A stretch of DNA of 64,000 nucleotides from Haliotis rubra (lineage: Eukaryota), in assembly GCF_003918875.1 (NCBI RefSeq), contig NW_025765359.1, forward strand, positions 620,001-684,000. The letters run 5' to 3'. Shown piece after piece: positions 22,901-52,900 of the stretch; within the stretch, counting starts at the first letter, position 1, and each line of letters starts with the position of its first letter. The position numbers and the translations under genes are program-made. The notes under the pieces are model-generated. The model was not told where the DNA came from and made no database searches. It saw only the letters and a program-made list of their open reading frames with translations.

Positions 22901-25900
22901 GTATTTTCATATGGAGTGGATCCCATGGAGCTGGGGCAATGTGTTAACAACAGAATATGAAAAGACAACAAAAAAAGTGTTGACAACAGAACACTTGACT
23001 TGAAGCATTTTCGTCTGTTGCCATGATCAATAGTGAATAGAATTTTTTTTCACTAAATTGGGATAAATGTAAAATTATACTATCCATTGAGTAAGGAGTT
23101 TTATGCCCTAAGTGCAATCTTGGCTGAGAATGCCATGTTTTTGTTTTGTTTGTTGTGTAATGCTGCACTCAGCAATATTCCAGCTATTTTACAGAGGTTT
23201 GAACCTGGACTAGACAATTCAGTGATAAGGTGAGGTGAAATTGGGTTCAACGTCGTACTTGAGAATATTTCGCTCATATGACGACGTGCATGCGCGTGTA
23301 TGTGTATGTGCGGCTGTTTGTACTAGCGCAGACTGAAGCTGGTTTTATAGTGCCAGCCCACTGAGATACCATGCCGCAGTGAAGCATGAATACCCCACTC
23401 AGACACATTATACTGACTCCGAGCCGACCAGTCCTTGTTGTACCCATTAATGCCGAGCGCCAGGCAGGGACCAACAAGTACCATATTTTAACGTCTTTTG
23501 GTATGACGTGGTCGAGGATCGAACCCGCGACCTTCCACTCTCTGGGCGGACGCTCTAACCACTACACCAAGGAAGCAGTCTCTGAATTCATATTAGTGAG
23601 TGAGTCTAGTTTTACGCCACACTCAGCAATATTCCAGCTATTTTACAGAGGTTTGAACCTGGACTAGACAATTCAGTGATAAACATCATGAGCAATATCT
23701 ACACAGTTGGGATACCAAGAATGGGCTTCACACATAACATCCATTTTGGAATTAAACCTGTGTCTTTGTCATGACAGGCTAACACTTTAACCGCTACACC
23801 TCCCCTGAAATTTCAAAACAGTTAAAGACGATGAACTTACAAATATGTTTAATAATGAATTGTATACATAATATATCCTCTTTGATTTACACCTGATCAT
23901 GTCATAGTTTTAATACATTAATCATTTTATTATGTACATATACAACCATGACTAATTTGCCTATTTATTTACATTTATTAACATGATATTTACATATTTA
24001 CTATTCAGATAAAGGTAAGTACAATGTGAATATCTAGATGTCTAACCTCACACTGTTCACAATTTTATACACATGAACATGTTTTTCATTCACGTTTCTT
24101 ACTCATTTTTCTGTTCACCATCAAAGACTTGCAGTTGTTTCAACACAACACAGAATCTGTCACTGGTCATCTGTTTGGAAAGGTTATTGGAATCAAGCAT
24201 TCAATAATATTTTATCTTTTATATTTCTTGAAATACAGCAATTAAAGGATTTGACACAAAATTCAAATTCAAAATGCTTTTATCGTTTTATCAATTCTGA
24301 ACTCAGTGTTAAAAAAACGGATATTGGTTTCGTCAAGTACTACAACATTTTTGTCTTATATATTTGTTGTGGAATTTGGATGGTTCATTAAGATTGTTTT
24401 CATTCTAGTAGTATATTTTGACTGACAATAGCCTTTCCATTGAAGACCTCAACAATATGTTGTTTGTAATCCAGAACACTTCCTTGGGCAAGTAGGATTC
24501 ATTCACATATTAACCCAGTTCACATCTTGCACATGTCACAAAGATGTGTTGTTCCATCATTTCTGCAAACCTTGCACAATTTGATATTCCCAGATTAACT
24601 ATTGGGTGAATGAGTGAGAGAAACAAGCTGTTTTCTGCACCACTGTTTGCAATATCCCAGTGATATCCTACAGGATTATACAATGGTGTTAATGCATTGT
24701 AGCCATCACACAAGAGTCATTTTGTGAATGGTGAATGTTTTAACTTAATTATGCCAACTGAATTAGGAAAGGAGGTAAGATCAAGATCCACTGCCTGTTC
24801 CCCACATGCACAAATACAGATACAGTCACTTTAGTTTTTCTTCATGGCTTGACTTGGATGTTGTGAAATGATTCCTGGCAGTGCACAGTTTATGGACAAT
24901 GTTTTCCACACATCTGATATTGTCATTACCTCTTTAGGATCAATAGTTGACGTTTATGATCCTTCAATTTGTCTGATTATGTTTCCATCTGATTTTGATT
25001 CCATCCCTGATTTTGATTCAAACAGAATCAAGGCACAATGTTTCAGGAGACTCTTCAAGATTATGTGAGAGATGTGATGGTGTTTTTCTCCAAGATTGGT
25101 TCAAGCATTGACCATTAGTTTCCTTAAGTGGTAGATTTCTTCCTGACTGCGAGGAGCCATCAACTTTTTGTTTCTCCTCTTGTCAAAGCTGTTGAACCAT
25201 CTTGGCTGCCCATGAGCTCTTCTCTTCAACCTCTTCCTCTCATAGTCATCTGCTGACCCATGACCTTTATGCTTCCTGGCATGTTTATTCTTCTGTTTGA
25301 CTGATTCATAAGATGGAAAGAGCTTGGCAGGATAGGAGAAAGATCTTCCCTTAAGTCTGTCAAATAACCTTTCCTTCTCATTGAACATCTTCATGACAGG
25401 ATCCGACTCTGCTTTCTCTGGCTTGTATGGATAAGTCTGTTCAAAATCTTCCTTCCTCCTGTGCATCTGTCTTATGTCATCCTGCAGATCTTCATAATCC
25501 TCAACCTGTCGCGGTTGCAAGGCTGCAGAAGGATCAACAAAATGGTACCCTCTAGGAGCTCCAGCTCTTCTTCCTCCATGAGCAAATGTGGGACTGCTTC
25601 GACCAGTGTAGTACCATTGGAGGAATGTACCCACAGAAGCTAGGGCTCCTGAAGGAAGAGCCATCTCTTTCCACAGAAGCTGCTTAATGTCTCTAGCTTT
25701 CGGCTTGGGAGGTACCTTTACCTTAAGAAGGTAGTTGTCGTACAGGATGAAGAAGACATCACAGTACAGCCTCGGCCTGAGGAACAGAGAGGATTTGATT
25801 CCTATCCTGGTATCGAACACAGCCAGCTCATCTCCCTCATCAAACTCCTCACCAGCTAATGTTAGTTTGTAGTTTGAGAGAGACAGCCCTGACTTCATCT

Positions 25901-28900
25901 CTACTCGTTTCTTAAAGGCTGCCACTGTTTCCTGAGCATACGCATGCATCTTGTAGATGACATTCTGGGTTGTATGGATGAACACTGGATACTGAGTCAG
26001 TTTGAGGTTGACGTGAGTCCTGAGATCCTCCACAGCTGTGACTATTCTTTCTCTGTTTGAAAGTTTATAGTCACCCAAGTACATATCATACACAGAAGCA
26101 TTCGGGACACCGAGTTGTTCCAAGATGGCTTTCACTGATCGTACAGATCTCTTGGATGAAACTTTTAGGATCTCGGTCACATCATCACCCAGTTTGAATT
26201 TCAATGAGACTCCATACAAAACGTCCGGGTCAGCATTTGACAGACTTAAATCCATAGTGATAGCAGGTGTCCTGTATGTTTGTTTCTTAAGTGTTTCAGA
26301 AAAGTCCACCTCTTTGCCGCCTCTGAAGATGCGGATCAGATTCACGGATACTCCAATGATTCCATGCAGTTTTAGAGCAACTGTAGACCATCGGTCAAAC
26401 TGGGACACTTTGACTGTGTGAACTTTGCCTGCATCATCAGTAATTGGCATTTTCTGAACACTCAGTTTGTGGTACAGGCCAATGGTTGATAGTTTCAGCG
26501 TATCATTGTCATCTACTCGGTAGTATCCGAGGCAAGTGCTCCAGTTGACTACCTTCCGCTTGTGGTATAATACTAGAGTGTGTTTGGGTAGATACAGGTC
26601 AAATAGGGCCATGATGTCCGGTGTGTTCTTGGTCACTGTTCGTCGTAACACTGTCCAAATAACATTCATTCCAGTCATACACGGGTCCAGATACAAATGG
26701 TATGTGCTGCCCCAGAAAGTCTCAACATGGACTAACATATCATACAGTATATGCACCATGACAAAGATAGTTGAACTCTTTCCTATCCTATAGTTGAAAA
26801 GGTATTGCCTGTTTTCTAATGGCTGATCCTTGAACAATAAATCAAGTCTCTCCATGGCTAAGCCCCTTTCCTGTTGGAGTCGAAACTTCAACTGAAGAAC
26901 TGTCATAAATAATTCGACCTCCATCTCAAATTTCATGTTCAGCTGTTTGATTTCAATATTGACCTTCACCAACTCTTTTGGCATAATCAAGATGGCTGCC
27001 CCAGATTCCACCTTGTAGAACTGGGAGATGTCCATGGGATGGTTGGTTCCGGGTTTCAGCATCATCAACTTATGGATCCTTTGGTCGTACTGAAGAGTCT
27101 CCTTGGTCAGTCGTAGAATTGTTGACAGGTCATCACTGATGACCGGTGTGTACAGGTTGAGGGTATCTGGGTCTTTGTATGACCACATGACCAACTGCTG
27201 ACCCAGTACACCATCAAGGTCAAGGCCGTCCAACAATGAACTGTGGTACAGCCCGTCATCACTGTCATCATCTCTTTGTATTGCTTCCAGTTTCCTTTGT
27301 CTCTCTCTCCTCTTCTGTAACAAGTAGATTCATTGTTAACACAAGATGTCTAAATAATTGACTAATTGAAGAAACAGAAAATGAGAAGGGTTTCTTTGCA
27401 ATACAATTAACTCAGTTTCACTTTTTAATTTTTAAGCATTTTTTACCTGTCAGTTATTCTTTTGTTGGAAATTAAACAAAGATTGAAACACTTGATATGG
27501 TCTACAGATTAAAGTGTAAATAAAAAAAAATCACTGATATGCAGTTTCGTATAGGACCCAAGTGTTAACAATTTATCTTATACATTACAAAGTATGAGTA
27601 ATTTTGTATGCAGACCACAGAATATTATTGTACACAACCCAGTACAGAATTAAATACAACCCAAATAATGAGTCTTAACTTTCTGAGAAAAATATGAATT
27701 TTGTTTTAAACCAAATCAAACTTTCAAAGTGACTTACCCTCTCTTTCACCCTCCTTCCCCGTGGGTCTCGGAGCTCCAGTGGATTGTCATGATATATTCC
27801 GTACATTCTTGTTCAATCACAGCTGATTTCAGCTCAATGTCTTTCTTTCTAAATCCATAAAATGAAATCTTTTGAGATTATTCCATATCCTCACAACTGA
27901 CACTCACTTTCTCAATGAAATGATTTGAGAAATTGTCGTATGACAAGAAAGTGACTAGCTGTCGGCCATGTTTGCCTGTGTTGCTAATACAAACAGTGAG
28001 GTAGGGCCTGGCCGCACTTAAACTGGGTAGACACAAACATATACCAGCTCCTCACAGTCACCTAGCTGTCATTTCACCAGTGTGACGCTTCACTGCACCG
28101 ATCACTTTATCTTGATTTCAATACCAATAACGGAAAGCAAGCACACGTTTCAATGGCCTATTGACTTGGGGAGAATTGACACTGACGTAGGCTCACAAGT
28201 ATTTGCTTTGTTGGCGTTGCAATGAAAAGGTCATATGATCTTGTATATTAATGTACAAGCATTACTGCAACACAACGTGAATATATCTCCATTGGCTCGT
28301 CAGTGTGAGAGAAATATAGCTATTATCTTGTATAAGCCTATAGTGTGTAGTATGTTTAAGCTGTAAGATACACTGATCATTCATAGAGAAAGTCACATTA
28401 AAAATATAGGCAGCCATCGATAAAGGTTGCAATACTAACTATTTATATCAAATATTGCATTTATATCAATAATAAATTATTTATTATTCATATTTGTTAA
28501 AATAATATTGATGATTCATTTTCAAATTTTGACGATATATGTTACATGTTGATTATTATTAGTGTTTTTTAAATGAAAGTTTATGAAACTATTCATTGTA
28601 CTGATTTTCTGAGTCAGTCATTCAGTCAATGATTATTATTGATTATTTTTGATCCACTGATAAATATATCTTTGCTAATAAATATGATTGAAAATGGCCT
28701 GATGTAGCTATACAGGTAGAAAATGGTGAGATTATTGCACTTATGATCCTTTATCAATCTGAAGTTTTAACTGAAAATGTTCTGAAATTATATTTAAAAA
28801 TTCAATTATTTAACTAGAAAAACAAAGAATCAAAGAAATTGCTAAAAAAATATTTTACAAAATTAGGAATACATTTGAATACATTATGAAAATTACTGTG

Positions 28901-31900
28901 TATATGTTGAAACCAAGTTTATGTTCTATCTATAAGTTAATCTTCATAATTCACAAAAAATCAACATCAAAACCCATAATCATTGTCTTTCATATGTTGT
29001 GTTTAAGTAATTCATCTCAAGTAAAACTACAAGTTCCCACAACCATATGTCATCCTGTATTTAATATGTAACATGTTTGTTTTTCAGTACACCCCTGGTA
29101 TCTACGAGATCCAGAGGCGAGAAAACAGATGTATTCTCAAGTTCCCAGATGCTCAGTCCGACTTGGAGGGAGAGTACACTTGCCGTTGTGGAGACGCTAT
29201 CACTAGCTGCGATCTCTATGTGGAAGGTAAACTCTCATTGAGAAAGGCATCCTCAATTGTTTCCACTCTCTTAAAAAAACATCCATTTTTTTATTATGGG
29301 GCCAAGACTCAGGAACACATGAATTGACTTAGACCAGATCAGACTAAAAGACAATTATGATTTTGCTTTTGGATAGACTTATTTGATTTTTGTATTTACT
29401 AATTTTTGACGCATAATTCAGGTTAGTGATTCAAAGTAAATAAAATTATAATTTGAAAAGTGACTGAAAGTCAATAATGAAATGTCTTTCCGATAGACTT
29501 ATTTGTATTTTGATTTACCAATTTTTGTCCCAAACTTCAGGTAGTGGTTCAAAACAAATAAAATTACAATTTAAAATATGAAATATTGTCCTCTTAATTA
29601 GAAATAGGTAGAAGAAATTTCTGTTTTAAAGTTTTAAAGAAAAGTTTTGATATTTAGTTTTTATTGATAGTAAGAGTGAATGAGTTCTAATATTTGACAT
29701 TTTTCTGATAGGAATAAAACCCCAATATTTTGTATTAATGTTTTTCATTCCAATTTGTATTTTTGGAGTCAGTAGATTAGGAATGTATGTTCAATATGTA
29801 AATATCTGAAATATGTAAATATTAATATGATCATCGTATCAGAACCTGAGTGGGAGTTCATGAAGAAGCTGGAGGATGTAGAGGCTGTTGAACGTGAAAA
29901 GGCCATCTTCACATGCGATGTCAGCGACCCAGAGGCTGAAGTCAGCTGGTTCAAGGATGAGAAGGTAAGAGTTATCCCCCTTTCTCGCAAGGACATCTTT
30001 AATTACTTCAATAGGTTTCTTTGAGGTGCAAGGTCAGTTTTATTGTTTTCGTAAGATCTTTTCTGAGCCCATGGACCCTAACTCCCTCATGTGCTCCAGT
30101 GTAAATGCTAAACCTCAACACAGCAATATTTCATTCACTTCACAAATGAATATGCTCCATGTTTTAACAGCAATATAGCCATTGTCAACAGGTTGGTTAC
30201 TGGAGGTCCAACTCTATCCTGCTCTGAATTGTAAATGGGATTTTAAATATTTTAAAATAATACGGAAATTTAAATCTCACCTTGCACCTTTAATAATTTT
30301 CTACATGCAATTATAACCTGTCATCGATATTATTGAAACCTATCTGTGATATTTCATGATTATTTAATGTCACATCCTGCTGACATACACCAGACTCCTG
30401 GGCCTAGATTTTCGAAGCTTTCTTAGCGCTAAGATAGTCGTAAGTGCCATACATTAACATTAACTTATGACTATCTTAGCGCTAAGAGAGCTTTGAAAAT
30501 CTAGGCCCTGGTACTGAACCCTGAAGTAATATCTAACAAATAACACACCATGTAAAATTCAAAGTACTAAATCCTGTTCACTTGTATTAAAATATTAACA
30601 CATATTGTAACGTAACACATAATTGTCTGCATTATTTATGTTAAATTTGGATTTTTCATTTGAACTGAGTTATAATGTAGTGATTGTTGTACTTATTGTT
30701 TTATATTGTTGTGTTTGTTGTTGTACTAATTTTGTATTGTTGACTTAACGCCTAACAGACAGAGACTGGTGAAATTGTTACCATCAAGCTTAACACCGAG
30801 GAGGTATACCTGTAGTAACTTAGCTAAATTGTTTCAACTGAATAGTATAGTCTTTCCCACCTACTAGCACCCCATAACATTATCTCATACTCCCTATATC
30901 ATACATTGTTACATTTTGTACATAGCACCCTGTAGCACCCCATAATATCATCTCATAATATCTATACAATACTTTGTTACATCTTGTATATAGCACCCTA
31001 TACCACATACTAGGGCTGGCTATCTGAGGTGAGGTGAGGTGAAATTGGGTTTTACGTCGTGCTTGAGAATATTTCGCTCATATGACGACATGCATGCGTG
31101 TGTATGTGTATGTGCGGCTGCTTGTACTAGCCCAGACTTAAGCTGGTTTTATAGTGCTAGCCCACTGAGATACCATGCCGCTGTGAAGCATGAATACCCC
31201 CTTAGACACATTATACTGACTCCGAGCCAACCAGTCCTTGTTGTACCCATTAATGCCAAGCGCCAGGCAAGGACCAACAAGTACCATATTTTAACGTCTT
31301 TTGGTATGACGCAGTCGGGGATCGAACCCGCGACCTTCCGCTCTCCGGGCTGGCTATCTGAAGCTCACAGAGATCGAAAAGTATTATCTAAGTATCTATC
31401 GATTATTCTAAAGTGCCAGAGAAGTAAATTTGATAAAAACAGGAAAATATTCCCAAAGAAATCAAGATATTTTACACCATGGGTTAGTGATATGTTTATA
31501 TATATTCATGAGTTACCGATACCAACGAGCACAAGCATCCTGAACACACCGCAGAAGCAGCCTTTGAATAATATAAGATATAATGTGTGCACATTAAATC
31601 TTTATTTCATCTCAACAGTTTAAGTATGATATTATCATTGAAACAATTTCATGTTGATAATTGTTGCTAATTCTTTTCCATGGACCATATTTCTGATTAT
31701 CAAACCCTTTAGCCAGCCATGTCATATTCTCATCTCCATTATTACAACTTGTACCCTTTTTTTATTATACAGTAATGTTGATGTCATAGTCATGGTGAAA
31801 TCTCAGATACTATACCCAGAGACCATATAATACCCAAGAAAACTAAATCGTCTTGGGTAACCATGACATTATTTGTTTTAGATATGTCAATTTTTTTCTG

Positions 31901-34900
31901 AAGCTTTAAATACAGGTAATCAGTTTACTGAGATTCCACTATGACTTCACTATAGTATCAGTTCCTTTAGTCCTTCATTTTCCTTTCCTTTTCCTATCAC
32001 CATTAGTGGTATGCACTATTTGTAACTCTCCCCTATGTATGAGGATTACCTCCCTTTCCTAGTATCATTCATGGTGGTTCAATAAATGTGTGTTGATACA
32101 TTAAAGTTTGCCGAAAGAAAACTTAATATTTATGAACTAAAATACACATGTGAAATCCTAGAAAAGGAGTTCTCTCCCTTTTGAAATTCATATTTTGAAA
32201 AACAAATTTACAATTTGAAAAAGACAAAAATTATGCTCTTTGTGGCCCTAATGTTGCCACAAGATCATAAATTGGCACTTGTAAGCCTGTGTATATTATG
32301 TAGGTCTAATTTCCCAAGTACAGTTTAATTCTTACTGCATGTCAGTTTCTATATAATTCTTAACTTTAAAATTATGTTTCAGTTTCATATGTTCAGTTTT
32401 AATGACATTAACACAATCATTAATAAAGATTTACTTAATCTAACAGTACACTGCACGTTTCAGTTCTCTACTGTAAATTAACCAATCAATGATGCTGAAA
32501 AATTGAAGGTAGGTGTTTTACATACCTTTAACTTAGAGCTGACATTGACTTTTTTAATTTGACCTTCAGGAACTTAAAGCAGGTGGTAAATTCCTGTTTG
32601 AGAAGGATGGCTTGAAGCGCCGTCTGGTTGTGAAGAACTGCAGTATCAAGGACGATGCCAAATACAGCTGTCATATGCTCAACCAGTCCACATCAGCTGA
32701 TCTGTTTGTGTCTCGTAAGTGATTGTTTTAAGTGCTGTAAAGGATAATTGTACAATGCGCAATGTTGTTCAGTGCTCACATCATTGACGACTAGATTTTA
32801 TTGTTCAGGTTTGATGAGAGAGCTTCACAGCACCATCCTGGGCAAGAATCATACTTTAGAGAAAATTCTGTCCTCTTCCTTTTTGTCTTTTTTTCTTTGT
32901 TTGTTTGTTTTTGTCAAAATGTCATTGCAACTCATTGCATATAGTACTTCCCCTTTCCTGCAAGATCATTTATGATCATCTGTATGTGGTAAAATTTTAC
33001 CTCTGTCTCAATGCTTTCTTCCCTTTGGAGCTAGCAGGCCAGGGTAGGATTGATGTTTCTGGTCAATACAATGTTAACCTTAAGTCTGTATTCTTAGCTG
33101 ATGTCCGCTTCATGAAGAAGTTGGAGAACAAGACCGTGAAGGAGGGCGAGAACCTGGTCCTGGAATGCAAGGCAGCCAACCCTCACAAACACCCTGTCAA
33201 GTGGTTCAAGAATGGACAACCTATTGGAGATGATGTTAGGTCAGTATCAGAGTTGTCTGCCCTCTTTTCAGAGTTATCTCCCTTCAGTTAATGGAACGTA
33301 GGGTCATAGAAGAGAGAGAATTGATTTCTAAATTTGAATTTTAAATAGATGTTAACAGTTTTATATTTGTGCCCAAATATGGTCAATAAAGAATGTAAAA
33401 TACCAATAAACCTAATTTTGAAGCTTTGAGAAAGAATTTTGAAATTGAAAATAAGTGACATTCTCTAAGTAACAAAGCAGGGTTACTGATGTATTTTCTC
33501 ACTCGTCAGGATCGACATCACACAGAAGGGAGAATCCTTCAAGCTGACCATCAAGGGAGCCAAGCCAACAGATGAAGCTGAATACAAGCTTCAGATTGGT
33601 GAACGACCAACCAAGTCTCAGGTCACCGTTCAAGAACGTGAGTAGCAGAATGACTGAAATAACGAATGCAAAGGAATCATGTGGGCAGGAAACACATGTC
33701 TCATTCAGGGGCAATGGGGTAGTCTAGTGGTCAAAGCGTTCGCTCGTCATGCCAAGGACCAGGGTTCGATTGCCCAGATGGATACAATTTGTGAAGCCCA
33801 TTTCTGGTGTCCCCCGCCACGATCTTGCTGGAATATTGCTAAAAGTCGCCTTAAACGAAATTCATTCACTGGTTTAGTTGGCCCTAATGAAAAATAAGGT
33901 GAGAAGGGAAAAACATCACGAGACGCATTGTATTTACTCTAGCCGAATAAAAGTCATTTACCCACTCAGTCTGTCACTCAGTCAGTGTTCCATTCAGCTT
34001 GAATATTGGTCACATACAAACATAATTTAAGTCATTGTACATGGTGACAGCTAGGCTGGTGATAGTCATAGTGTAAATTTGACATCCACGTGGGACTATG
34101 ATCCATGTATTTGTGTCTTACAGAGCCCAAGCCTCCCAAGATTGACCCTAGTGCTATTCCCAAGGAGATCTTTGTGAAGAAAGGAGAAAGGATTGAACTT
34201 GACATTCCTTTCGTTGGTGAGTAGTGATGAGAGTACTGTAACATTGGTTATTGTCAGGAAAGTCAGCTAGGTGCTGCTTACGGCCACCATCAGTTTTGGA
34301 ACTCCTGGATCTTCACAGGGGTGCCACACTTCTCTTGATAGAGTTATACTCCAGATTGTTCCAAATTCTGAAATAATTGACCATTATTGTCTTTCAGTGG
34401 AGCTCCTAAAAACATAACTTTCTAACTAAAATTCAACTATTTCCCAGGCGCCCCTCTTCCAAGAGCACAATGGGCAAAGGATGGCCAGCCTCTTAGTGAA
34501 GCTGACCTTGACATTGAGACATCTAAGGCCACACCAAACTGATCATCCCAGATGCCCAGAGAACTGATACCGGAACATATGAGCTGTCCTTGACCAACGA
34601 GGCTGGTTCCGACAAGATCCCAGTCAAGATAACTGTTATGGGTAAATATATTCTATTTATTGACGTCATCCCCAAACTGTCAACTCATGAGACACATTAC
34701 TAAAACTGTTTCTTAAAGTTGATGGAAGTGACTTAAAGTCCATTAACCTAACTGACCCATGAATTTTTCATACTAAATGTGTCTTGCATTCTTCAGACAA
34801 GCCTGGCAAACCCAAAGGACCCCTGGATGTGACAGACATCTATGCCGATCGCTGTGCCCTGTTGTGGGACAAACCAAAAGATGATGGTGGCGCTCCTATC

Positions 34901-37900
34901 ACTCACTACTTGGTTGAGAAGATGGACTCTGCTACTGGTAAAATATTTGCTTTTGTGTTTGGTGTTGCTCTTACTTTACATACAAGAACAGAGGTCACAT
35001 ATGTACTTAGCGTACATTAGCAATTCCATTTTCCTTGATAGCAAAATGTATTTCATGCAAGAGTATCATCATCTTATTTCACCATCTTGAACCAACACAA
35101 AAGTAATGGTTGTCTATAGTCATGAATTTATTTGGCAGATTTTCTTAATTATACTTCCTGTCGGTTATCGTATGTCTTATTGACTTCAGGCAAATGGGAG
35201 CCAGTCTGTGAGACAGATGACCTTGAAGTTGATGTCAGTGACCTGACACCAGGTCACAAGTATCAGTTCCGTGTGGCCGCTGTCAACTCGGAAGGCGTCA
35301 GTGAATATTTACCATCAGACGGAGAAATCCTTGCCAAGGATCCATGGGGTATGTCCTTGATTGTTTTCAATGTCATTTTCCTGCTGAACAGATGGAGTAA
35401 TCTAAGATATACTCACTATCTCTGCAGGTGATCCAGTTTATCATCATGTTTAATACCAACATCCAAATGCACAAATCTCATTCATGGTGTTGCAAGAGCG
35501 ATGCTGTCGACATATTTATTCACACTGTATCAACATCTGCATCTATCTCTTCCAGATCCTTCCGATCCACCAGGAACTCCAGAAATCATTGATTACGACA
35601 AGGACTATGCCGAAATCAAGTTCGACCCACCCAAGAAAGATGGTGGCGCCCCCATCCAGAGTTACGCAGTTGAATACAGAGAGAAGGGAACAGAGGAATG
35701 GAAGAAGGTAAGTCCAACAGGGATGAAGCAAAGCTAGTTCATGAAGTCGAAGAAGAGTCACGTCAGGAACTCTCAGAAATCACTTCAGTTCTGATCCAAA
35801 TTGAAATGCACTAAAATGCAACTGTCCTGTCATGTTGTCCTCTATTGCCACAGGGTACTGACGTTCCCGGTTCAGCTGACACCGCAACTGTCGATGGCCT
35901 TAAGGAAGGCAAAGAATACGAGTTCCGAGTCAAGGCTAAGAACAAGGCCGGACTATCGGAGGGCAGTGAGTGCTCCGGACCTGTGGTCCTCAAGTCAAGG
36001 AGAGGTACTGCTGTTGCTGTTGTAGCTCTTATATCCTTTACATTTTCACATCTTATATCCTTTACAGCTCACACCTTATATCCTTTACATTTTCACACCT
36101 TATATCCTTTACAGTTCACACCTTATATCCTTTACATTTTCACACCTTATATCCTTTACAGTTCACACCTTATATCCTTTACAGTTCACACCTTATATCC
36201 TTTACAGTTCACACCTTATATCCTTTACAGTTCACACCTTATATCCTTTACAGTTCACACCTTATATTTACAGTTCACAAAATACCTGGGTTTTCAGAAT
36301 ATTGAGGTTATACTGATTTAATATGTATAATTGATGAACAAATTGTAGTTAAGTACATACTGCATGTTTTACCTTGACTCAGAAAAACAGTCACATTCTT
36401 TGAAAATTTAAAATTTAAAATCACTTCAAGGCATTAAAAGAAACTCAAATGCCACATAAAGATACACAATAACCACAATCAACAAATGCTTGTCTCTATA
36501 CTGTTTTGCGTTTCCTTGCAGTTAAGCCCGTATCAACCACCAGGATGTCACCAAGAAGATTCAGATTAAGGCCGGGCAGCCCTTCTCTATCCCTGTCACC
36601 TATATTGGCGAACCAGCACCCAAGGCAACATGGACTGTCAAGGGACTGGTACGTTTCTGCTGACATTAGAATCTTTCTGCAGAACCATGACAATACGATA
36701 TGACCTTCTGGATGAAACAACCTTTTGTCACGTTTGTTTCAACATTATTGTCCACTAACAAAATTATTTCCTGGCAATATTTTTACAATATTTTATATTT
36801 AATGTCCCAACTCATACAATGAAGAATCAAGATTTAACAACATTGATTTATGTGATTTATTGATTTATTCAAGCGATAAAGAAATATAGAAAATAAATAA
36901 ACAAGAATCCACATCAAAACAAATATGAATATATTTATTCAAGCAGTTATACAAAAGTATTTGTAATCCAGACGGCATATCGGCTTGTGATGGTTGAATG
37001 TTTCTGACAACACGCTTGATGCCCTTTCTGCAACTGCAGTGGACGTGTGTTGCCTACTGTTTTCCTATCTAAATATTTTGTTCTGTAAACGTGTTCCACG
37101 ATATAAGCCTGTATGGCCTATATATTCTGTTTTGTGTTGGAAACTTGTGTTTCCGTGTCTCATACATGTGCTATATATGTTTCCCTCCTTTCATGTTGAC
37201 AGAAGTGTCTGAATGCTGTTTTCAAAAATTTGACATTATATCACAGCATGTTAGAATATTGGGGGAGAAAGGTTATGTGATTAATACCATAGACGCTTAC
37301 CATTTGGAAATCTGCTCAATTCACTTTTTTAATTGAAAAATAATGTAAAATTCATGTTTTAAGAAACCATTACTATTTTGAGATTTGGCAACCTCGCTTT
37401 TGGAACCATTAAGGTAATTCTGCTTCACTTTTTTGAAAAGTTGTAAATTTTCATAAACAGGAATGGGAATATATTTTTTATTTTTGTAAAACTTTGAACT
37501 GTTGAAAGAACCTTGAGCATTTAAATTTTCCTGTTGCTTATATGGTATTGTTCAGTGATCAACCCATATATGTTTCCTGTGGGGTGGGCACTGGGTGTAC
37601 TTGTGACCACTGGGTGTATTCGTGACCACTGGGTGTATTCGTGACCACTGGGTGTATTCGTGACCACACAGAGTGTACTTGTGAGCACACAGTGAGTATT
37701 TGTGAGCGCACAGTGTGTTTGTGACCACAGATCACAGAAACTATTTTACCTGTCTTTTAATCATTGCTTCAAATCCCATCTTTTCATGCTGAATGTTCCA
37801 TCACGTTGTGTTGAAAATGTCCTGATTTCATGCTGGATATCTCATCTATCTGTGCCTTTTTGCCCAACAGGATGAACCGGTAAGTGTGGCTGTAACGTGT

Positions 37901-40900
37901 TACATATAAACATGATATAGCCTAGCTTAGAAATACATCTATAATCTGTCTAAACCTGTCTACATGTCTAGAATGTCTAAAGCCTGTCTATACGTGTTGT
38001 CTATTTGTGTTGTCCATAACGTGTCCGAATGTAATCTGTCTAAAACCTCTTTGTATGAGGATATGTTGTTTTAAACATGTTCTGTCCAGAGGTAACATTG
38101 TATTACTGTCTTCTGTTCAGAGGTAACTTTGTGTTACTGTGTTCTGTTCAGAAGTAACTTTGAGTTACTGTGTTCTGTTCAGAAGTAACTTTGTGTTACT
38201 GTGTTCTGTTCAGAAGTAACATTGTGTTACTGTGTTCTGTTCAGAAGTAACATTGTGTTACTGTGTTCCGTTCAGTGGTAACTTTGTGTTACTGTGTTCT
38301 GTCCAGAGGTAACATTGTGTTACTGTCTTCTGTTCAGAGGTAACATTGTGTTACTGTCTTCTGTTCAGAGGTAACATTGTGTTACTGTGTTCTGTTCAGA
38401 AGTAACTTTGAGTTACTGTCTTCTGTTCAGAGGTAACTTTGTGTTACTGTGTTCTGTTCAGAAGTAACTTTGTGTTACTGTGTTCTGTTCAGAGGTAACA
38501 TTGTTGTGTTACTGTCTTCATGTTCTAACCACTGACTTTCTTTACAGAGAACTTCTTCAAAGTGTGTAGACATACCCTTTCACAAACTGTCGGGAATAAT
38601 CTTCCTGTTACTTTGAAAATTTTGTACATTCTCTTTGACACAAAAACAACGCTGATCTCAAAGGACCGACTGCAATGTTTTAATTTGGTCGATAATTCAA
38701 AATGATTAGGAATTTTGTAGCAATCAAACGATCTGGGTTTTTTTGGCTGAGAGCACTGGAATGGTTTGACTGAAGACAACAATGTAGATGTAAAACAAAA
38801 CTGTACTCCAAAATAATCTTGAGGTTCGACACAAAGTGTCGATATCTTAATCTGAGCCAATACTGATAGCATGTAAAAACAATACAATCATATGAAGACA
38901 AATAACTTGAGAGTGGCCTTACCTGTCCGGTAAGCATTTCGGAGATGTGATTTTCAAATATTCACCATCCATCCAGATTAACTTTTGACTTCCAGGGCAT
39001 TTCGGAGATGTGATTTTCAAATATTCACCATCCATCCAGATTAACTTTTGAATTCCATCAAGTTGTTATTGTCCCTGACAGTGCAGGTCTACACACTTTA
39101 ACTATCTACAATCTTTCCTAGTCTTTCTAACCCCTCCTCCAGCCAGACTCTGGCTCAGTCTTACTGTCCTGAGTTGTCTGTAAACTTTCAGATGGGACCT
39201 CCTGGTTCTGTAAGTAACTTACACCATGACCCCCTCACTCACTCACCCAACATCACCCACCCTGCTCATCATGCAACCTTCATCACCCATGCCTCATCAC
39301 CTTCCACATCACCTCTGACCACAAGCTGGAGGGTTGAATGTTAATAATCCAAACAAATAAAGCATGACGTCTTGCTTTTGAATTATTCATATTCAACAGA
39401 AGTTGTTCGTTTTAAGCCTCACTACAGCTATGTGAAGGTTGGGTCAGTGCCAGTGTGAACTGTATAGACCTGATGATAAAGTCTTGGAGTGTTCGATGTT
39501 CATGAAGGTTCTGGTAATAACATTTTATGGTGTGAATAGCGACTTCTTTATTGCCACTTTTGTGACGTATTGGTGCAGATACAAATGCCATATTTATTCA
39601 ACAGTTAATCTAATCATTTGAGTTTATGGTCTGAAAACTGAATAGAATAAAAAAATCTAAAAGTATTTTCTTTGAATGTCTTGATGGTTGGCAGAGAGAT
39701 AAAACAAATTATTAACAAAAGTGTCACTTTGATGCTTTCTTTATTGAAAGATTAAGCATCTGAAACATATATTGATCTAATTGAGATATGGTATTTCAGT
39801 TTTTGTTTTGTATTCAGTAAATAGATAAGTGAACTAAGAAACTAGATATACGTCTGAAGTGGTAGTATCAACTCTGAACCATGTCACATATATATGAAGT
39901 GGCTGGGCATACCATTGCTTGTTATGACCTTGACCTTGCATGAGAAACAGACCTATGGTACACATAGCGCCAGGTTTCGGAAAAAGATGTTTTCTGTGTC
40001 TGGCCAAATCACAGAAACCTGCATAAAAGTTAGTGGACTTGTGAGGGTCGGGTTAGACGGTGCCAAATTCTCTAAAGTGATTCAACTAAAATAATAATAA
40101 CTACCATTCATTAACAGAGACCTATGCAGCACAAAGATCACTTTGAAGAATGAGGCAATACGAAGGTCCATTCCATGTTCCTGGTGTAAATTAGGTTACT
40201 ATCATCCATTAATGCAATACTGTTATCATGTACATTACATACTCCCCCTTTGAAAAATCTGAAATCTGATCTTGAAGAAAAGTGTCATCAGAAAAAGAGA
40301 TTATATATATTTCACATCGTCTTCAAGAATTATTCTGTGAGAAATTTGGATGCTCATCAAAAGAGGCAGACTGTGAATTGATGCTCAGCTGTTTACAACT
40401 GCATCACTTAAGACGGTGCTGTTTCTTCATCGTTTTTGACATATTCCTGTTGTCAGGCCATGCATTTCTAATCCTTGCTGTTCAGTAATGTTCAAGTTCT
40501 TGTTCTTTTAATCATTCAACTGGTATTCTTCACTTTCTGCTGTTTCGGTCAAGAAAGCTCTTCTTTCACATCAAGGCCATTTCTTGCTCTGTCGTGAACA
40601 ATGGTGAAAAACAATCACTTGTGTCTCATTCTTCCTCTACATGAAACATTATATTGATGTTGAACTGATAAGCATCATCCAAAAACTTTAAAATAGCAGC
40701 CTGCCCCGATACCTCCATCAGTTGAGAACATCAACCTATCTGTACCTGCCTGAAACCTACGACTGTAATCTTTGTATCATGGGGAAATTTTATCAGCATC
40801 TTCTTGCATCAGTGTCTTAGCTTAGTCCATGAATCGTCCTTCATGATGAACTTTGATCACTCTATCAATACCTGCCTCAAACCTACAATAGTAATCTTTG

Positions 40901-43900
40901 TATTCTGAGGAAACTTCATCAGTGTCTTCTTGCATCATCATCTTAGCTTAGCCCATGGATCATCCTTCTTGATGAACGTCATATTTTCACCAGTACCTTT
41001 GACCAACTTCAGATCAACCTTCTTCAGTTGGCCAATCTCAGAATGATACATCCCTTCCTAAACCCAGGCCCTCTCCATGTTCTCTCCAGAGGTGCCCTGC
41101 ATCATGGGCAATCCAAACATACATGTTTAATGAAACACTAGCTGTGTTTGATGTTAAACCTGTCAAACACTGAACTTGAACCACAATTATGATTCCATTT
41201 AGAAAATGGTCATATGTAACATATATTATATTTGGGATTACACTTTCTAAGTAAAGTACAGATTCTACTACTTTTGTTGGGTTGAGTCCCATCCGGGATT
41301 TGAACCCACACCCTCAGAGTCAGGTACCTAATCGCCAGCACAAAGGTCAGATGCCTAACCCCCTCAGTGGACGCCATGGTGACTGAGTGGGTTAGGTACC
41401 TGAATCTGAGGGTGTGGGTTCAAACCCAGCATGGGACTCAACCCAACACAAGTACTTGAATCTGTACTTTACTGAGAAAGTGTAACCCCAAATGTAACAT
41501 ATGTTACATTTATGATTGCATGATGTGTTGAATGAGGGATTATATATGGTCCCAGGGATTATGAATCAGGTTAAGCTGTTTCTATAATACATTAATTTTT
41601 GTTTAAAATATTAACTTTTTTGCAATAAACATCTTTCCAACTTAATTTGTACCAAATGCACACAATAGTTAGTGTCTAACTGTTGTTTTCTGGATGAACA
41701 CTGTATTGGTGTTTATTTCTTAATATCAGCTATTAAAACATTCCATGAAGATGTACTTATCAGGTATTAACTCACAGCACTATGTTTATTGACATATATC
41801 CTTTTGGATTTAACACATGTAACCTTTTGGATATAACATTTATAACGAAGGCAATATGACATATTGACATATTTAACATTTATATATAATGCCTATAACA
41901 TTGGGTATATAACATTATAACATTGGGAATATAACATTTATAACATTGGTATATAACATTTATAACATTGGGTATATAACATTTATAACATCAGACTACA
42001 TTTATAAACTGCAGATTAAAACATTTAACCTTGTGGATACATGTATAACATTTATAACACTGGGGATGTATTATGTATAATCTTTAGGATATTACATTTA
42101 TAACCTTTGGGATATAACACACACAATTTCTCTTTTTTCCACATACAATTAATATCAATGTACACATATTAAATATTTATTTCAATGGCTTTCTTGACAG
42201 CTTTTAAGGAGTTAAACATGTTTTATGAAGAAGTGTACATACAACGTTATCAATTACCTTATTAACTTGAAAGACTGTATTCTGTTTCCGGGCCCGGAAA
42301 ATCTTTGTCATAGATAAAGTTATAGAGGTGATGAGAGGAATTATTTGATGTCAGAATTATGAATTAGATTATCAAAAGTTGGTGTACAATTATATGACCA
42401 ATAGACAATGTTAATTGATATGTATGATCTTTGTGTTGAAGGTAGTCTATCCAAATGAGTTTTACTGGTGTTTATAATATGTTGTGTAATACTTGTAGGC
42501 TGGAACTGAGATTCCTCTCGAACCATCAGAGAAGGTGGCTATCAATAACGAGCCAAAGAAGTCGACTGTGGACAACAACAAAAGTGTCAGGAAGGACACG
42601 GGTCTCTACACCATTACTGTTGCCAACAAGCATGGCCAAGATACAGAAACAGTGGAAGTTGTTGTCCTTGGTGAGTGGTAACCTTCACCTAGGGGGGACA
42701 ACTCTGAAATCAGTACACTTTTTGATAAAAAGCAAAGGATACTCAGGGCATAAAAATGATTTGGTAATTTGTCAAATATTGAAGATTATATCACCTCTTC
42801 TTTCTATCTGGATCATATTTTTTGTATTATTATTTTATTATGATATTATCATAACACATTACCTTTACTTATATGTTAATATCCTCGACCCATTTCTCTT
42901 ATCAAAATCTTGGCACATAAGTTTCCTCACTTATGTATGGTCTTTGATTGCATAGGTAATTTTAGCATTGTGGAATTTGAATCAGACAAAAATGAACAAA
43001 ATGGCACCAAAAAATATATATCTGATAAATATACTGAATAATTGAGGATGCACTTCTTCTGATGGCGAATGAAAGGTGCTGTTAATCCTATCTGGTCTAG
43101 TCAATGGGATCCTAAAATCTGAAACCACAAATGCTTTTGTTCTTTAAATATAGAATTTCATCATCGACTGTATTCAAAAGTGTTAAAGTGCAAATCATAC
43201 TTTCATACTATATGAAGATATATGTTTCAACTGTTCTGTTACCCAGGTCCACCATCAAGACCATCTGGTCCACTGGCTGTCAAGGATGTAACCAAGGATA
43301 GCGCCACTTTGAGCTGGAAACCTCCCCCAGACGATGGCGGCAATGATATCACGTGAGTTGAGTACACTCTTGTCAAGAAGAAATAAAAGAATCATTTGAC
43401 ATTTCTATGAACACATCAATGCATAGATTGATTCTCATGATGCAGTCACTGAATTATCTGGTTTGGACTTGATTATTTACAGACTGTTGTCATATACAAC
43501 ACTCGTTATATTTTGAATGACACTTTCTCAGTAAAGTACAGATTCTTGTACTTTTTGGGGTTGAGTTCCATGCAGGATTCGAACCCTCTCAGAGTCAGGC
43601 ACCTAATCGCCAGCACACAAAGTCAGATGCCTAACCCCCTCAGTGGACGCCATGGTGGCTGAGTGGGTTAGGTACCTGAATCTGAGGGTGTGGGTTCAAA
43701 CCCAGCATGGGACTCAACCCAACAAAAGTACTTGAATCTGTACTTTACTGAGAAAATGTAACCCCAAATATAACATATGTTACATTTATGATTGCATGAT
43801 GTGTTGAATGAAGGATTATATATGGTCCCAGGGATTATGAATCAGGTTAAGCTGTTTCTATAATACATTAATTTTTGTTTAAAATATTAACTTTTTTGCA

Positions 43901-49900: not shown

Positions 49901-52900
49901 ACTTTAGTGATGTCCGATAAATAAGGTCAAGGATACTTGTTATTTTTTTGTCATTTTTGTAGTTTAGCATATTGGATGTATTTCATCAAAAAAAAAATCA
50001 AATTGTTTCTGCAGACGCCCCAGATGCTCCCAGAGACCTTGCTATTGCCAAGTACGACAAGTTCTCCTGCACCTTGGAATGGAAGCCTCCATTGTCTGAT
50101 GGCGGCAACCCTGTCACAGGTAGGGAAACAGATCACCTGACACATGTGTTACATAATGGGCACGGTGGCCTTGATATATTACGTGCCATAATTCGCTATG
50201 CAGAGTTGCATCCCTTGTGTACACAAAACCTGTGATCATGTTCAAACCCCTGTCCACCACAATTCTAGGTTTTCTGTACCATACCCTACTGTAGTAAACA
50301 TTTGAGACACACATCATTCTAACTCTCCTCTCATATTAAGCTGACATGGATGATTTAACTGGAATAATGTTCAATTAGTGTTAAACCCATCTCACTCAGA
50401 TTATTTTGTTGAATTGATGTAATTGTCATACCATTTGAAAACACAATGAATATAGCAGAGTATAGATATATCTATACTTGATATGGATCCTGTCAACAAG
50501 TATTTAATTTGTGAGATACATGGATGGTAGGCTGTTATGGACTTGTTTCTTCTTTAAGTCAAATTTATTGAAGTTGCCTGTTCATAAAATGTGTTCCTCT
50601 TTGACAATCTATTGTTGTTTCTGTCTGTAGGCTACGCTGTCGAGAAGAGGGAACGTGGCCGTGACTGGATCAGGGCGAGCTCCTTCCCTGTCCCCGACAC
50701 TTCCTTCACTGTGCTCAACCTGAAGGAAGGCAGTGATGTGGAGTTCCGGGTTATGGCCGTGAATGAGGCCGGTCCAGGCAAACCCAGCAAGTCCACACCT
50801 TCTCACACCGTTCGGGATCCCATCTGTAAGTGGACTCACTCTCTCACTCTCATGGGAATAGTCTTGCGGTTAAAGTGTTTGCTTGTCATACCTAAGATTC
50901 AGATTCATTTCCTCATTTGGTTGTCATGTCGGAAGACAGATGTTAGTGTCCAACATTGTGATATGGCTCGAATATTGCTAAAACTAGTGTTAAATCTCAC
51001 TCACAAACCAAGTCTTCAGTTCAAAAAATTGGCAGAGCGTATGGACACCATCTTGTGCATAGTCTCCAAATTGATAACATATTTTCAAATACTATACATC
51101 TTCTCCCCCAGTCCCTGCCGGTTCGCCAACTCAGCCCAACGTGGACAAAATCACCAAGAACTCTGTTGGCCTGTCCTGGAACAAACCAACCAGCGATGGT
51201 GGCAGCAAACTCACAGGGTATGTTATTGAGAAGAAGAAGAAGGGTGAAGACGATTGGACGGAGTGTCTGACTCTTCCTGCTACCGCCACGCAGGGAACTG
51301 TGCCTAATCTGAAGGAGGGCGATGAATATTCATTCCGCATCCGGGCTGTGAATGGTGCCGGTCTTGGAGAACCCAGCAGGCCGACAAATGTGCTCACAAT
51401 TGAGGATCAACCAGGTAAAAAATGCCCACACACCATTCTGACCATTTTATGATACATTAATGGAGTAATGATGAGAATCTGTAGATTCCTGAACTGAATG
51501 CAACGAGCTCTGACGATTCATTATAAGTTTCTGATGTCATGATAATGGTTTACTACAGGGCAAATATTCAGATGCATCTATTTTAGTGTCACAGTTCAAT
51601 TTTGCTGAAGGTTAATCAGTCATGGTATTCATTTCATGCAGATTTTATACAGATTGTACAAATAAAATATTTCATTTTTTTTAAAGGATTTGTCTAATTT
51701 TTACAGTTTGATAATGTTCTTACCATAACAAATTAGTGTTTCTTTTAAGTATCAATAGACTTCTTTAGGATCCTATGTTGAATTGTATTGTTTAAATACA
51801 TTGTGCTTACTATTGATATGATTTATGCAATCAAACAATCTTCCTTCACAGAGAAGCCCAAGATGGATATGACTGGAGTGAGGGACATCACTGTCAAGGC
51901 TGGACAGGAATTCCAGATCAAGATCCCCTTCGTAGCCACGCCCAAACCCAAGGCTACATGGAAGCTTGGTGATGATGAGGTGGAGGAATCTGCTAGAACA
52001 ACATTCAAGGTGAGGGTCATTGGTTAGATCAAAGGGAAGTAACTTGTGTGCAAGAATAGAAGACCACTAGTAAATATATGAATTGCTTGGACTCATTATT
52101 TGGATGCTTAATGTAAATTGTACTGGATTGCAAAAGACAAAATGTAAGAAATTTGCTTTTTGGATATTTATGTATACATTTCAGTCTGCACTGAATGTTT
52201 TACTGGTGTAATTTTTCTGCATTGTTTATATACAATATATATTTGGTGTGTATGCGGTGTTTGTGTTTGTTGAAGAACATCTGTAGCAGTAGCAGTACAT
52301 AAAGTCATAGTGTAGGCCCGCCACTTCCCAACACCTGAATTCACCAAAATTTTGTTTAGTCACAGAGTCACTACCTTGTAGATTATAACAAATCTATGCA
52401 CAAAATAGATATGATTTTCTTAATGTTTTGAATTATCAATAGTGTGTTGTAATAAATATACCACATACTAAACATTATCTTCCAAATTTCATTCTTAAAC
52501 AGAATTCATTTTAACATGTATATGGACACATGTGATGTACCTGTATATTCACATATATGATATACCTGTATATTCACATCGTTGATCTATCAGTTAATTC
52601 ATATGTGTGATCTACCTATAAATCCATATTTGTGATTTACCTATTTATTCACATGTGTGATCTACCTGTATATTCACACCTGTGATCTACCTGTATTTTT
52701 ACCTGTCCACACCATTTCACCTACCTGCAGTACTGAGAGCACTTTGTTTTGCATGTGTCTAGATTCTAGATGGTAAAGGTCCCAAGGTCAGTTGTACAGC
52801 CATGGAATGAACGTATTCTGTATATGTTCTGAGTAGCTAGAACCAACACCTGGTGTCTTAATGAACATCATCTATATCATTAACATATCATACTTTCAGT

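What the first reader, a model, noticed from the sequence alone, without database searches (positions are those of the whole stretch)
24009..52786. Candidate microexon programme that edits loops of individual twitchin Ig domains
Seen: downstream of Ig8, the four longest introns (6.8, 2.6, 5.9 and 3.4 kb; the others are under ~1.5 kb) are all phase 0 and all split an Ig domain after its conserved Trp strand. Each contains a short stop-free segment whose length is a multiple of 3, bounded by AG and a GT donor: IK (24009-24014), TETGEIVTIKLNTEE (30759-30803), DEP (37871-37879) plus MGPPGS (39192-39209), and ILDGKGPK (52763-52786). Known: regulated microexons typically lie in long introns and insert into surface loops of modular domains. 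Inference: combinatorial splicing tunes binding or mechanics of Ig9, Ig10, Ig13 and Ig15 between muscle types. Gene predictors would probably miss all five.
Basis: partly seen in the sequence, partly recalled or inferred. Interest (0 to 1): 0.85.

Follow-up and report, generated by a model that had tools for sequence, protein, structure and literature searches.

The report
Alternative mini-exons in abalone twitchin
Three of the five tiny in-frame islands are real alternative exons of an abalone twitchin (giant muscle protein) gene that add 6-15 residues inside single Ig domains, and they are already annotated in a sister species; the two smallest (6 and 9 bases) remain unproven.

Summary
The window holds part of a Haliotis (abalone) twitchin gene on the + strand.

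Bare AG...GT in-frame islands are common: 641 occur in these four introns.

Three candidates match cassette exons in the NCBI RefSeq isoforms X1-X10 of Haliotis cracherodii twitchin. These are TETGEIVTIKLNTEE (Ig10), MGPPGS (Ig13) and ILDGKGPK (Ig15; ILDGKGHK there). Each is present in some isoforms and skipped in others.

- The Ig13 exon has a positional counterpart, VVGPGTG, annotated as alternative in Gigantopelta aegis. I found that exon in a related snail's genomic DNA.
- The Ig10 exon has a clear 57-nt homologue in that snail's otherwise unalignable intron.
- IK (6 nt) and DEP (9 nt) appear in no isoform or orthologue. They are nevertheless the two best splice-site pairs of 3491 in these introns (0.12 in-frame pairs that strong expected by chance).

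So alternative exons inserting into Ig domains are real for three of five. "Predictors would miss all five" is wrong. Muscle-type tuning is untested. The kind is known (for example the NCAM VASE exon) and these exons are already in public annotation.

The parts
22134..22274 (+). Ig9 first-half exon (ends ...VKWYKGDEALE); carries a 1-nt frameshift near 22208
24009..24014 (+). Candidate 6-nt microexon IK. Unverified.
   Evidence: Second-best AG..GT pair of 3491. Absent from all H. cracherodii isoforms and orthologues. No counterpart in the corresponding interval of the related snail.
25104..27329 (-). Nested antisense ORF with a ubiquitin domain inside the Ig9 intron. It accounts for part of that intron's length.
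   Evidence: Pfam PF00240, 64 bits. Conserved in the same intron of the related snail at L001:15631-17244.
29088..29226 (+). Ig9 second-half exon
29843..29964 (+). Ig10 first-half exon (ends ...SWFKDEK)
30759..30803 (+). 45-nt alternative cassette exon TETGEIVTIKLNTEE, inserted in Ig10 between strands C and C'
   Evidence: Identical peptide in H. cracherodii isoforms X1, X2, X4 and X6-X10; absent from X3 and X5. tblastn hit at 30756-30803. 57-nt homologue in the related snail at L004:3534-3590.
32570..32714 (+). Ig10 second-half exon
36522..36648 (+). Ig13 first-half exon; an apparent 1-nt deletion in the C run at 36527-36529
37871..37879 (+). Candidate 9-nt microexon DEP. Unverified.
   Evidence: Best AG..GT pair of 3491. 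Absent from all isoforms. No counterpart in the related snail. Other molluscs carry acidic inserts at this junction.
39192..39209 (+). 18-nt alternative cassette exon MGPPGS, inserted six residues after the Trp of Ig13
   Evidence: Identical peptide in eight of ten H. cracherodii isoforms; absent from X1 and X5. Positional counterpart VVGPGTG is alternative in G. aegis and present as ag|21 nt|gtaagt at L003:6742-6762.
42499..42670 (+). Ig13 second-half exon (a duplicate copy lies at 44772-44943)
51852..52009 (+). Ig15 first-part exon (ends ...ARTTFK)
52763..52786 (+). 24-nt alternative cassette exon ILDGKGPK, inserted in Ig15 after strand D
   Evidence: ILDGKGHK at the same junction in nine of ten H. 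cracherodii isoforms; absent from X2. Predicted structure.
55455..55578 (+). Ig15 second-part exon

Best explanation
The window is part of an abalone twitchin gene. Three of its long phase-0 introns, each of which splits an I-set Ig domain, carry a small alternative cassette exon: 45 nt in Ig10, 18 nt in Ig13 and 24 nt in Ig15. Inclusion keeps the reading frame and adds 15, 6 or 8 residues inside one Ig domain, leaving the rest of the domain unchanged.

In predicted models:
- The conserved core of the Ig10 insert (IVTIK) forms an extra edge strand next to strand C.
- The Ig15 insert lengthens strand D and the D-E loop.

Shown here: the exons exist, they are included or skipped in a congener's annotated isoforms, and two of them are conserved in position or sequence in a distant gastropod.

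Inferred only: that inclusion alters partner binding or domain mechanics, and that it differs between muscle types.

IK (6 nt) and DEP (9 nt) are unusually strong splice-site pairs with no transcript or orthologue support. I put DEP at about 0.45 and IK at about 0.3 of being real exons.
For: - Window exons are 86-100% identical to H. cracherodii twitchin isoform X4.
- Among RefSeq isoforms X1-X10 (XP_071104531-541), the only small indels in this region are TETGEIVTIKLNTEE, MGPPGS and ILDGKGH(K). They sit at exactly the Ig10, Ig13 and Ig15 junctions, and each is present in some isoforms and absent in others.
- G. aegis isoforms carry an alternative VVGPGTG at the same Ig13 junction. In a related snail's DNA this exon is ag|21 nt|gtaagt and is the top in-frame splice pair of its intron, which serves as a positive control for the scoring.
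- That snail's Ig10 intron holds ag|57 nt|gtacct encoding SEDGKIVTIRLDKYECTEE. Its similarity score to the abalone peptide is 38 against a next-best of 16.
- Domains are I-set with or without inserts. AlphaFold2 models have mean pLDDT 80.5 and 85.6.
- DEP and IK rank 1 and 2 of 3491 pairs. In-frame pairs that strong have an expectation of 0.12, and P(2 or more) is about 0.003 under an order-3 Markov null. None occur on the antisense strand or in the other introns.
Against: - RefSeq isoforms are computed models, and I could not inspect the RNA-seq evidence behind them.
- No transcript data for the window's own species were available.
- The three confirmed exons have ordinary splice scores (in-frame ranks 6, 11 and 26 of 641).
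- ILDGKGPK has no counterpart outside Haliotis.
- In oysters the Ig10 intron is only about 138 nt and has no cassette.
- IK and DEP are absent from every isoform and orthologue and have no counterpart in the related snail.
- The threshold behind the P value was chosen after seeing the data.
- Model confidence over the inserts is only moderate (10-residue block means 68-79).
Confidence: 0.85

Rival explanations
1. All five islands, DEP and IK included, are real regulated microexons. The 6-nt and 9-nt exons were simply missed by read aligners and by the annotation pipeline.
For: DEP and IK have the strongest splice-site pairs in 18.7 kb of intron and both keep the frame. The same scoring puts a known annotated microexon first in the related snail's intron. 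Other molluscs have inserts at the same junctions: RKIIRENPDK at Ig9 in oysters, and acidic D/E-rich inserts at Ig13 in oysters, Nucella and Elysia crispata.
Against: Neither is present in any of the 10 H. cracherodii, 5 G. aegis or 7 Octopus bimaculoides isoforms, or in other mollusc models. There is no conserved counterpart in the related snail's introns. The oyster Ig9 insert has no homologue in the abalone intron.
Confidence: 0.15
2. IK and DEP are chance pseudo-exons or decoy splice sites that are never, or only negligibly, spliced into mRNA. Only the three annotated cassettes are functional.
For: 641 frame-preserving islands exist by chance. One equally strong pair, not in frame, occurs on the antisense strand. 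There is no isoform or orthologue support.
Against: Two in-frame pairs scoring 18 or more against 0.12 expected.
Confidence: 0.4
3. All five are chance islands, and the long introns are long only because of repeats, a nested gene and a duplication.
For: The Ig9 intron holds a conserved nested antisense gene. Islands are abundant. The three confirmed exons have middling splice scores.
Against: Identical peptides appear in a congener's isoforms at the same junctions. The Ig10 exon is conserved in an otherwise unalignable intron of a distant gastropod. An Ig13 cassette is annotated independently in G. aegis.
Confidence: 0.02

Closest known systems
RefSeq twitchin-like isoforms X1-X10 of Haliotis cracherodii (XP_071104531 to XP_071104541)
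   Same: The same gene in a congener, with identical or near-identical cassette peptides at the same three Ig junctions, included in some isoforms and skipped in others.
   Different: A different Haliotis species or assembly (86-100% identity per exon). These are computed models without published description. They contain neither IK nor DEP.
NCAM VASE exon: a 30-bp alternative exon that adds 10 residues to the fourth Ig domain (PMC2116347, PMC2120034)
   Same: A small frame-preserving cassette exon inside one Ig domain that changes the domain's predicted loop structure. With its insert, Ig10's Pfam V-set score rises from 14 to 26 bits while its I-set score falls from 56 to 44. The VASE paper's abstract describes a constant-like to variable-like shift.
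   Different: NCAM is a cell-surface adhesion protein of vertebrates and is not homologous. The functional effect on neurite outgrowth was shown experimentally there; nothing is shown here. The Ig10 model still matches sarcomeric I-set domains best.
Conserved neuronal microexon programme of vertebrates (3-27 nt exons regulated by Srrm3/Srrm4; PMC12626424)
   Same: Very short frame-preserving exons in long introns, with deep conservation for some.
   Different: The tissue here is presumably muscle and the regulator is unknown. Two of the three confirmed exons fall in the 3-27 nt class; the 45-nt one does not. No regulatory motif was tested functionally.
Alternative splicing of titin-family muscle proteins (titin, projectin; PMC2120353 for projectin isoforms)
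   Same: Muscle-type isoforms of giant Ig/Fn3 proteins produced from one gene.
   Different: From my own knowledge, the known cases mostly add or remove whole domains or PEVK-type units rather than a few residues inside a single Ig domain.

Membership tests
Alternative cassette microexon | Short length that keeps the reading frame (multiple of 3, no stop) | tested here: met
   Lengths of 6, 45, 9, 18 and 24 nt, all stop-free in phase 0. The 45-nt exon exceeds the strict 27-30 nt definition.
Alternative cassette microexon | Canonical AG acceptor and GT donor of usable strength | tested here: met
   Scored with a matrix built from 35 real introns of this gene. DEP and IK are very strong; MGPPGS and ILDG are moderate; TETG is weak but within the range of real sites.
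Alternative cassette microexon | Present in some mRNAs and skipped in others | tested here: inconclusive
   Met at annotation level in a congener for TETG, MGPPGS and ILDG. Read-level evidence was not available. Not met for IK or DEP.
Alternative cassette microexon | Conservation of the exon in related species | tested here: met
   TETG and MGPPGS peptides are identical in H. cracherodii, and ILDG differs at one residue. A TETG homologue lies in the related snail's genome. An Ig13 cassette is present in G. aegis and in that snail. Not met for IK or DEP.
Alternative cassette microexon | Tissue- or stage-regulated inclusion | not testable with these tools
   No RNA-seq data were accessible.
Twitchin (titin-family giant kinase of invertebrate muscle) | Colinear Ig/Fn3 architecture orthologous to named twitchins | tested here: met
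   Colinear tblastn chains to Sinanodonta, Dreissena and Haliotis twitchin. The kinase domain lies outside the window.
I-set immunoglobulin domain (PF07679) | Profile match above the curated cut-off, and an I-set fold | tested here: met
   I-set scores of 32-56 bits against a cut-off of 23.7 for Ig9, Ig10, Ig13 and Ig15. Best structural matches are MyBP-C, titin and obscurin Ig domains.

The most novel reading that the evidence does not exclude
DEP and IK are true 9-nt and 6-nt microexons that annotation pipelines miss. Abalone twitchin would then carry a five-exon programme, partly shared across molluscs, that remodels individual Ig domains between muscle types. That would include giving Ig10 an extra edge strand, and so tune thick-filament or actin tethering in catch-like versus phasic muscle.
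Probability: 0.12. Interest if true: 0.6.

Novelty: already known. Interest (0 to 1): 0.3.

Why it matters
Twitchin tethers thick and thin filaments in molluscan catch muscle. Small alternative inserts inside individual Ig domains are a plausible but unstudied way to vary its binding surfaces between muscles. I found no paper on this in two literature searches.

The exons themselves are already in public annotation, so the added value is modest:
- The Ig10 cassette has a conserved homologue in a distant gastropod, where it is not annotated.
- The Ig13 junction is an insertion hot spot across molluscs.
- Two extra candidates are now defined well enough to test.

Tried and rejected
- A whole-library search with the 60-aa D1 linker exon returned mostly short fragments. 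Only the Sinanodonta partial protein was useful.
- DNA for the Dreissena, Sinanodonta and H. cracherodii twitchin loci could not be fetched: either not on record or the gene range was too long. IK and DEP could therefore not be checked in another Haliotis genome.
- A search with the Ig9-Ig10 region for transcript fragments gave few hits. Most were genomic read-throughs.
- No homologue of the oyster RKIIRENPDK insert, the Dreissena GTGQCDT insert or the other Ig13 inserts was found in the abalone introns.
- None of the five candidates lies in a repeat family shared with other parts of the window. TETG and ILDG showed only short local self-matches in adjacent intron.
- Counts of short RNA-binding motifs are descriptive only: 17 YCAY downstream of MGPPGS against 4.4 background, and a TGT-rich stretch downstream of DEP.
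- The idea that the Ig10 insert converts the domain to a V-set fold is only hinted at by Pfam. The structure search still favours I-set domains.
- A recursive-splicing reading of IK (AAAG|GTAAGT) was considered but not testable.
Full report
**What is in the window.** The + strand carries a chain of Ig and Fn3 exons, plus a linker exon with RRAS motifs.
- Partial twitchins from Sinanodonta woodiana and Dreissena polymorpha align colinearly from about 7.6 kb to the end of the window.
- RefSeq twitchin-like isoform X4 of Haliotis cracherodii matches the window's exons at 86-100% identity. The window is therefore an abalone twitchin gene, from a species or assembly other than that RefSeq record.

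**Check of the observation.**
- The five segments are as described: AG before, GT after, multiples of three, no stop, and the stated peptides.
- Junction refinement against the Dreissena protein gives four phase-0 introns: 22275-29087 (6813 nt), 29965-32569 (2605 nt), 36649-42498 (5850 nt) and 52010-55454 (3445 nt).
- Three of them split the Ig domain 6-8 residues after the conserved Trp. The Ig15 intron lies 16 residues after it.
- Ig14 and Ig16 have short introns (855 and 216 nt) at the equivalent position.
- A further intron of about 2.8 kb holds the second copy of a tandem duplication.

**Is the pattern beyond chance?** Not on its own. These introns hold 3491 AG..GT pairs of 3-60 nt, and 641 of them preserve the frame without a stop.
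- I built donor and acceptor matrices from 35 real introns of this gene.
- DEP and IK are the two best pairs of all 3491. MGPPGS, ILDG and TETG rank 6th, 11th and 26th among the 641 in-frame islands.
- In order-3 Markov simulations, in-frame pairs as strong as DEP and IK have an expectation of 0.12, and two or more occur in 0.3% of runs.
- The antisense strand and the gene's other introns have none.
- The threshold was set after seeing the data, so this is supportive rather than decisive.

**Evidence from relatives.** A region-restricted search with the Dreissena protein returned RefSeq twitchins of oysters, abalone, Gigantopelta and octopus.
- H. cracherodii isoform X3 has MGPPGS at the Ig13 junction and ILDGKGHK at the Ig15 junction.
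- The cluster holds all ten isoforms, XP_071104531 to XP_071104541.

| Cassette | Junction | Absent from |
|---|---|---|
| TETGEIVTIKLNTEE | Ig10 | X3, X5 |
| MGPPGS | Ig13 | X1, X5 |
| ILDGKGH(K) | Ig15 | X2 |

- No isoform has IK or DEP.
- These isoforms are computed models and I could not see their read support.

**Independent support from a distant gastropod.** Gigantopelta aegis isoforms differ by a VVGPGTG cassette at the same Ig13 junction.
- An ENA contig from a close relative of that snail (88-98% protein identity) gave four overlapping loci, L001-L004.
- The VVGPGTG exon is ag|21 nt|gtaagt at L003:6742-6762. It is the best in-frame pair of its intron under the abalone matrices, a positive control for the scoring.
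- In the 4.9-kb Ig10 intron of that snail, L004:3534-3590 is ag|57 nt|gtacct and encodes SEDGKIVTIRLDKYECTEE.
- That peptide shares E, G, IVTI, L and the terminal TEE with the abalone exon. Its similarity score is 38, against 16 for the next-best window in the locus.
- The rest of these introns does not align, apart from a nested gene.
- That exon is not in the G. aegis RefSeq isoforms.
- No counterpart of IK, DEP or ILDGKGPK was found in the snail.

**Other molluscs.**
- Oysters carry a 10-residue insert, RKIIRENPDK, at the Ig9 junction. It is present in Magallana gigas and C. angulata isoforms and absent in Saccostrea.
- The Dreissena model has GTGQCDT at the Ig10 junction.
- The Ig13 junction carries inserts of 6-13 residues in oysters, Nucella and Elysia crispata.
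- The oyster Ig10 intron is only about 138 nt.
- Inserts at these intron positions recur across molluscs, but their sequences are mostly lineage-specific.

**Where the inserts sit.** All four domains are I-set by Pfam.
- Ig10 with its insert (AlphaFold2, mean pLDDT 80.5): residues IVTIK of the insert form a strand beside strand C, and the constitutive ELKA segment becomes a low-confidence loop. IVTI is also the part conserved in the snail exon.
- With the insert, the I-set score falls from 56 to 44 bits and the V-set score rises from 14 to 26 bits. The model still matches MyBP-C, titin and obscurin I-set domains best.
- Ig15 with its insert (mean pLDDT 85.6): the insert extends strand D by two residues and enlarges the D-E loop.

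**Comparison with what is known.** Small alternative exons inside Ig domains are a known kind; NCAM VASE is the classic case.
- Two searches found no paper on twitchin microexons.
- The three exons are nonetheless in public RefSeq records.

**Verdict.**
- The functional claim is untested.
- The statement about gene predictors is wrong.

Noticed in passing
window ~22208, ~34527, 36527-36529, ~56168: Four coding exons need a 1-nt correction in a short homopolymer run to stay in frame with the H. cracherodii protein. These are probably assembly indel errors, at roughly one per 2 kb of coding sequence, so intron sequence is likely affected too.
   Followed up: partly
window 41226-43626 and 43506-45934: A 2.4-kb tandem duplication at 96.9% identity carries the Ig13 second-half exon and the next Fn3 first-half exon. 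Splicing all four copies would break the frame. It may be a real recent duplication or two haplotypes assembled in tandem.
   Followed up: partly
window 25104-27329 (-) and L001:15631-17244 (-): A nested antisense gene with a ubiquitin domain sits in the Ig9 intron of both the abalone and the Gigantopelta-like snail (63% DNA identity over 1.5 kb). A further 79-nt block of 77% identity lies at 27732-27810.
   Followed up: partly
L004:3534-3590: A conserved 57-nt in-frame exon in the Ig10 intron of the Gigantopelta-like snail, homologous to the abalone TETG exon. It is not present in any G. aegis RefSeq isoform.
   Followed up: yes
window 14438: A GC donor (AAG|GCAAGT) ends the linker exon 14339-14437. 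It is supported by contiguous alignment to H. cracherodii. A second possible GC donor lies at 46899.
   Followed up: partly
window 17867-18049: H. cracherodii isoform X6 lacks 31 residues of this D1-linker exon, including one RRAS motif. The PKA-site region may therefore also be alternatively spliced.
   Followed up: no
window 39210-39409: There are 17 YCAY motifs in the 200 nt downstream of the MGPPGS exon, against 4.4 expected from the intron background.
   Followed up: no
window ~38090-38494: A tandem array with a period of about 31 nt in the Ig13 intron, seen as repeated AG..GT pairs at regular spacing.
   Followed up: no
oyster proteins P0168-P0172: Oyster twitchin isoforms also differ by small inserts elsewhere: EEKKT in the PEVK-like region, GADKK and GKS between C-terminal Ig domains, and RKIIRENPDK inside Ig9.
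   Followed up: partly
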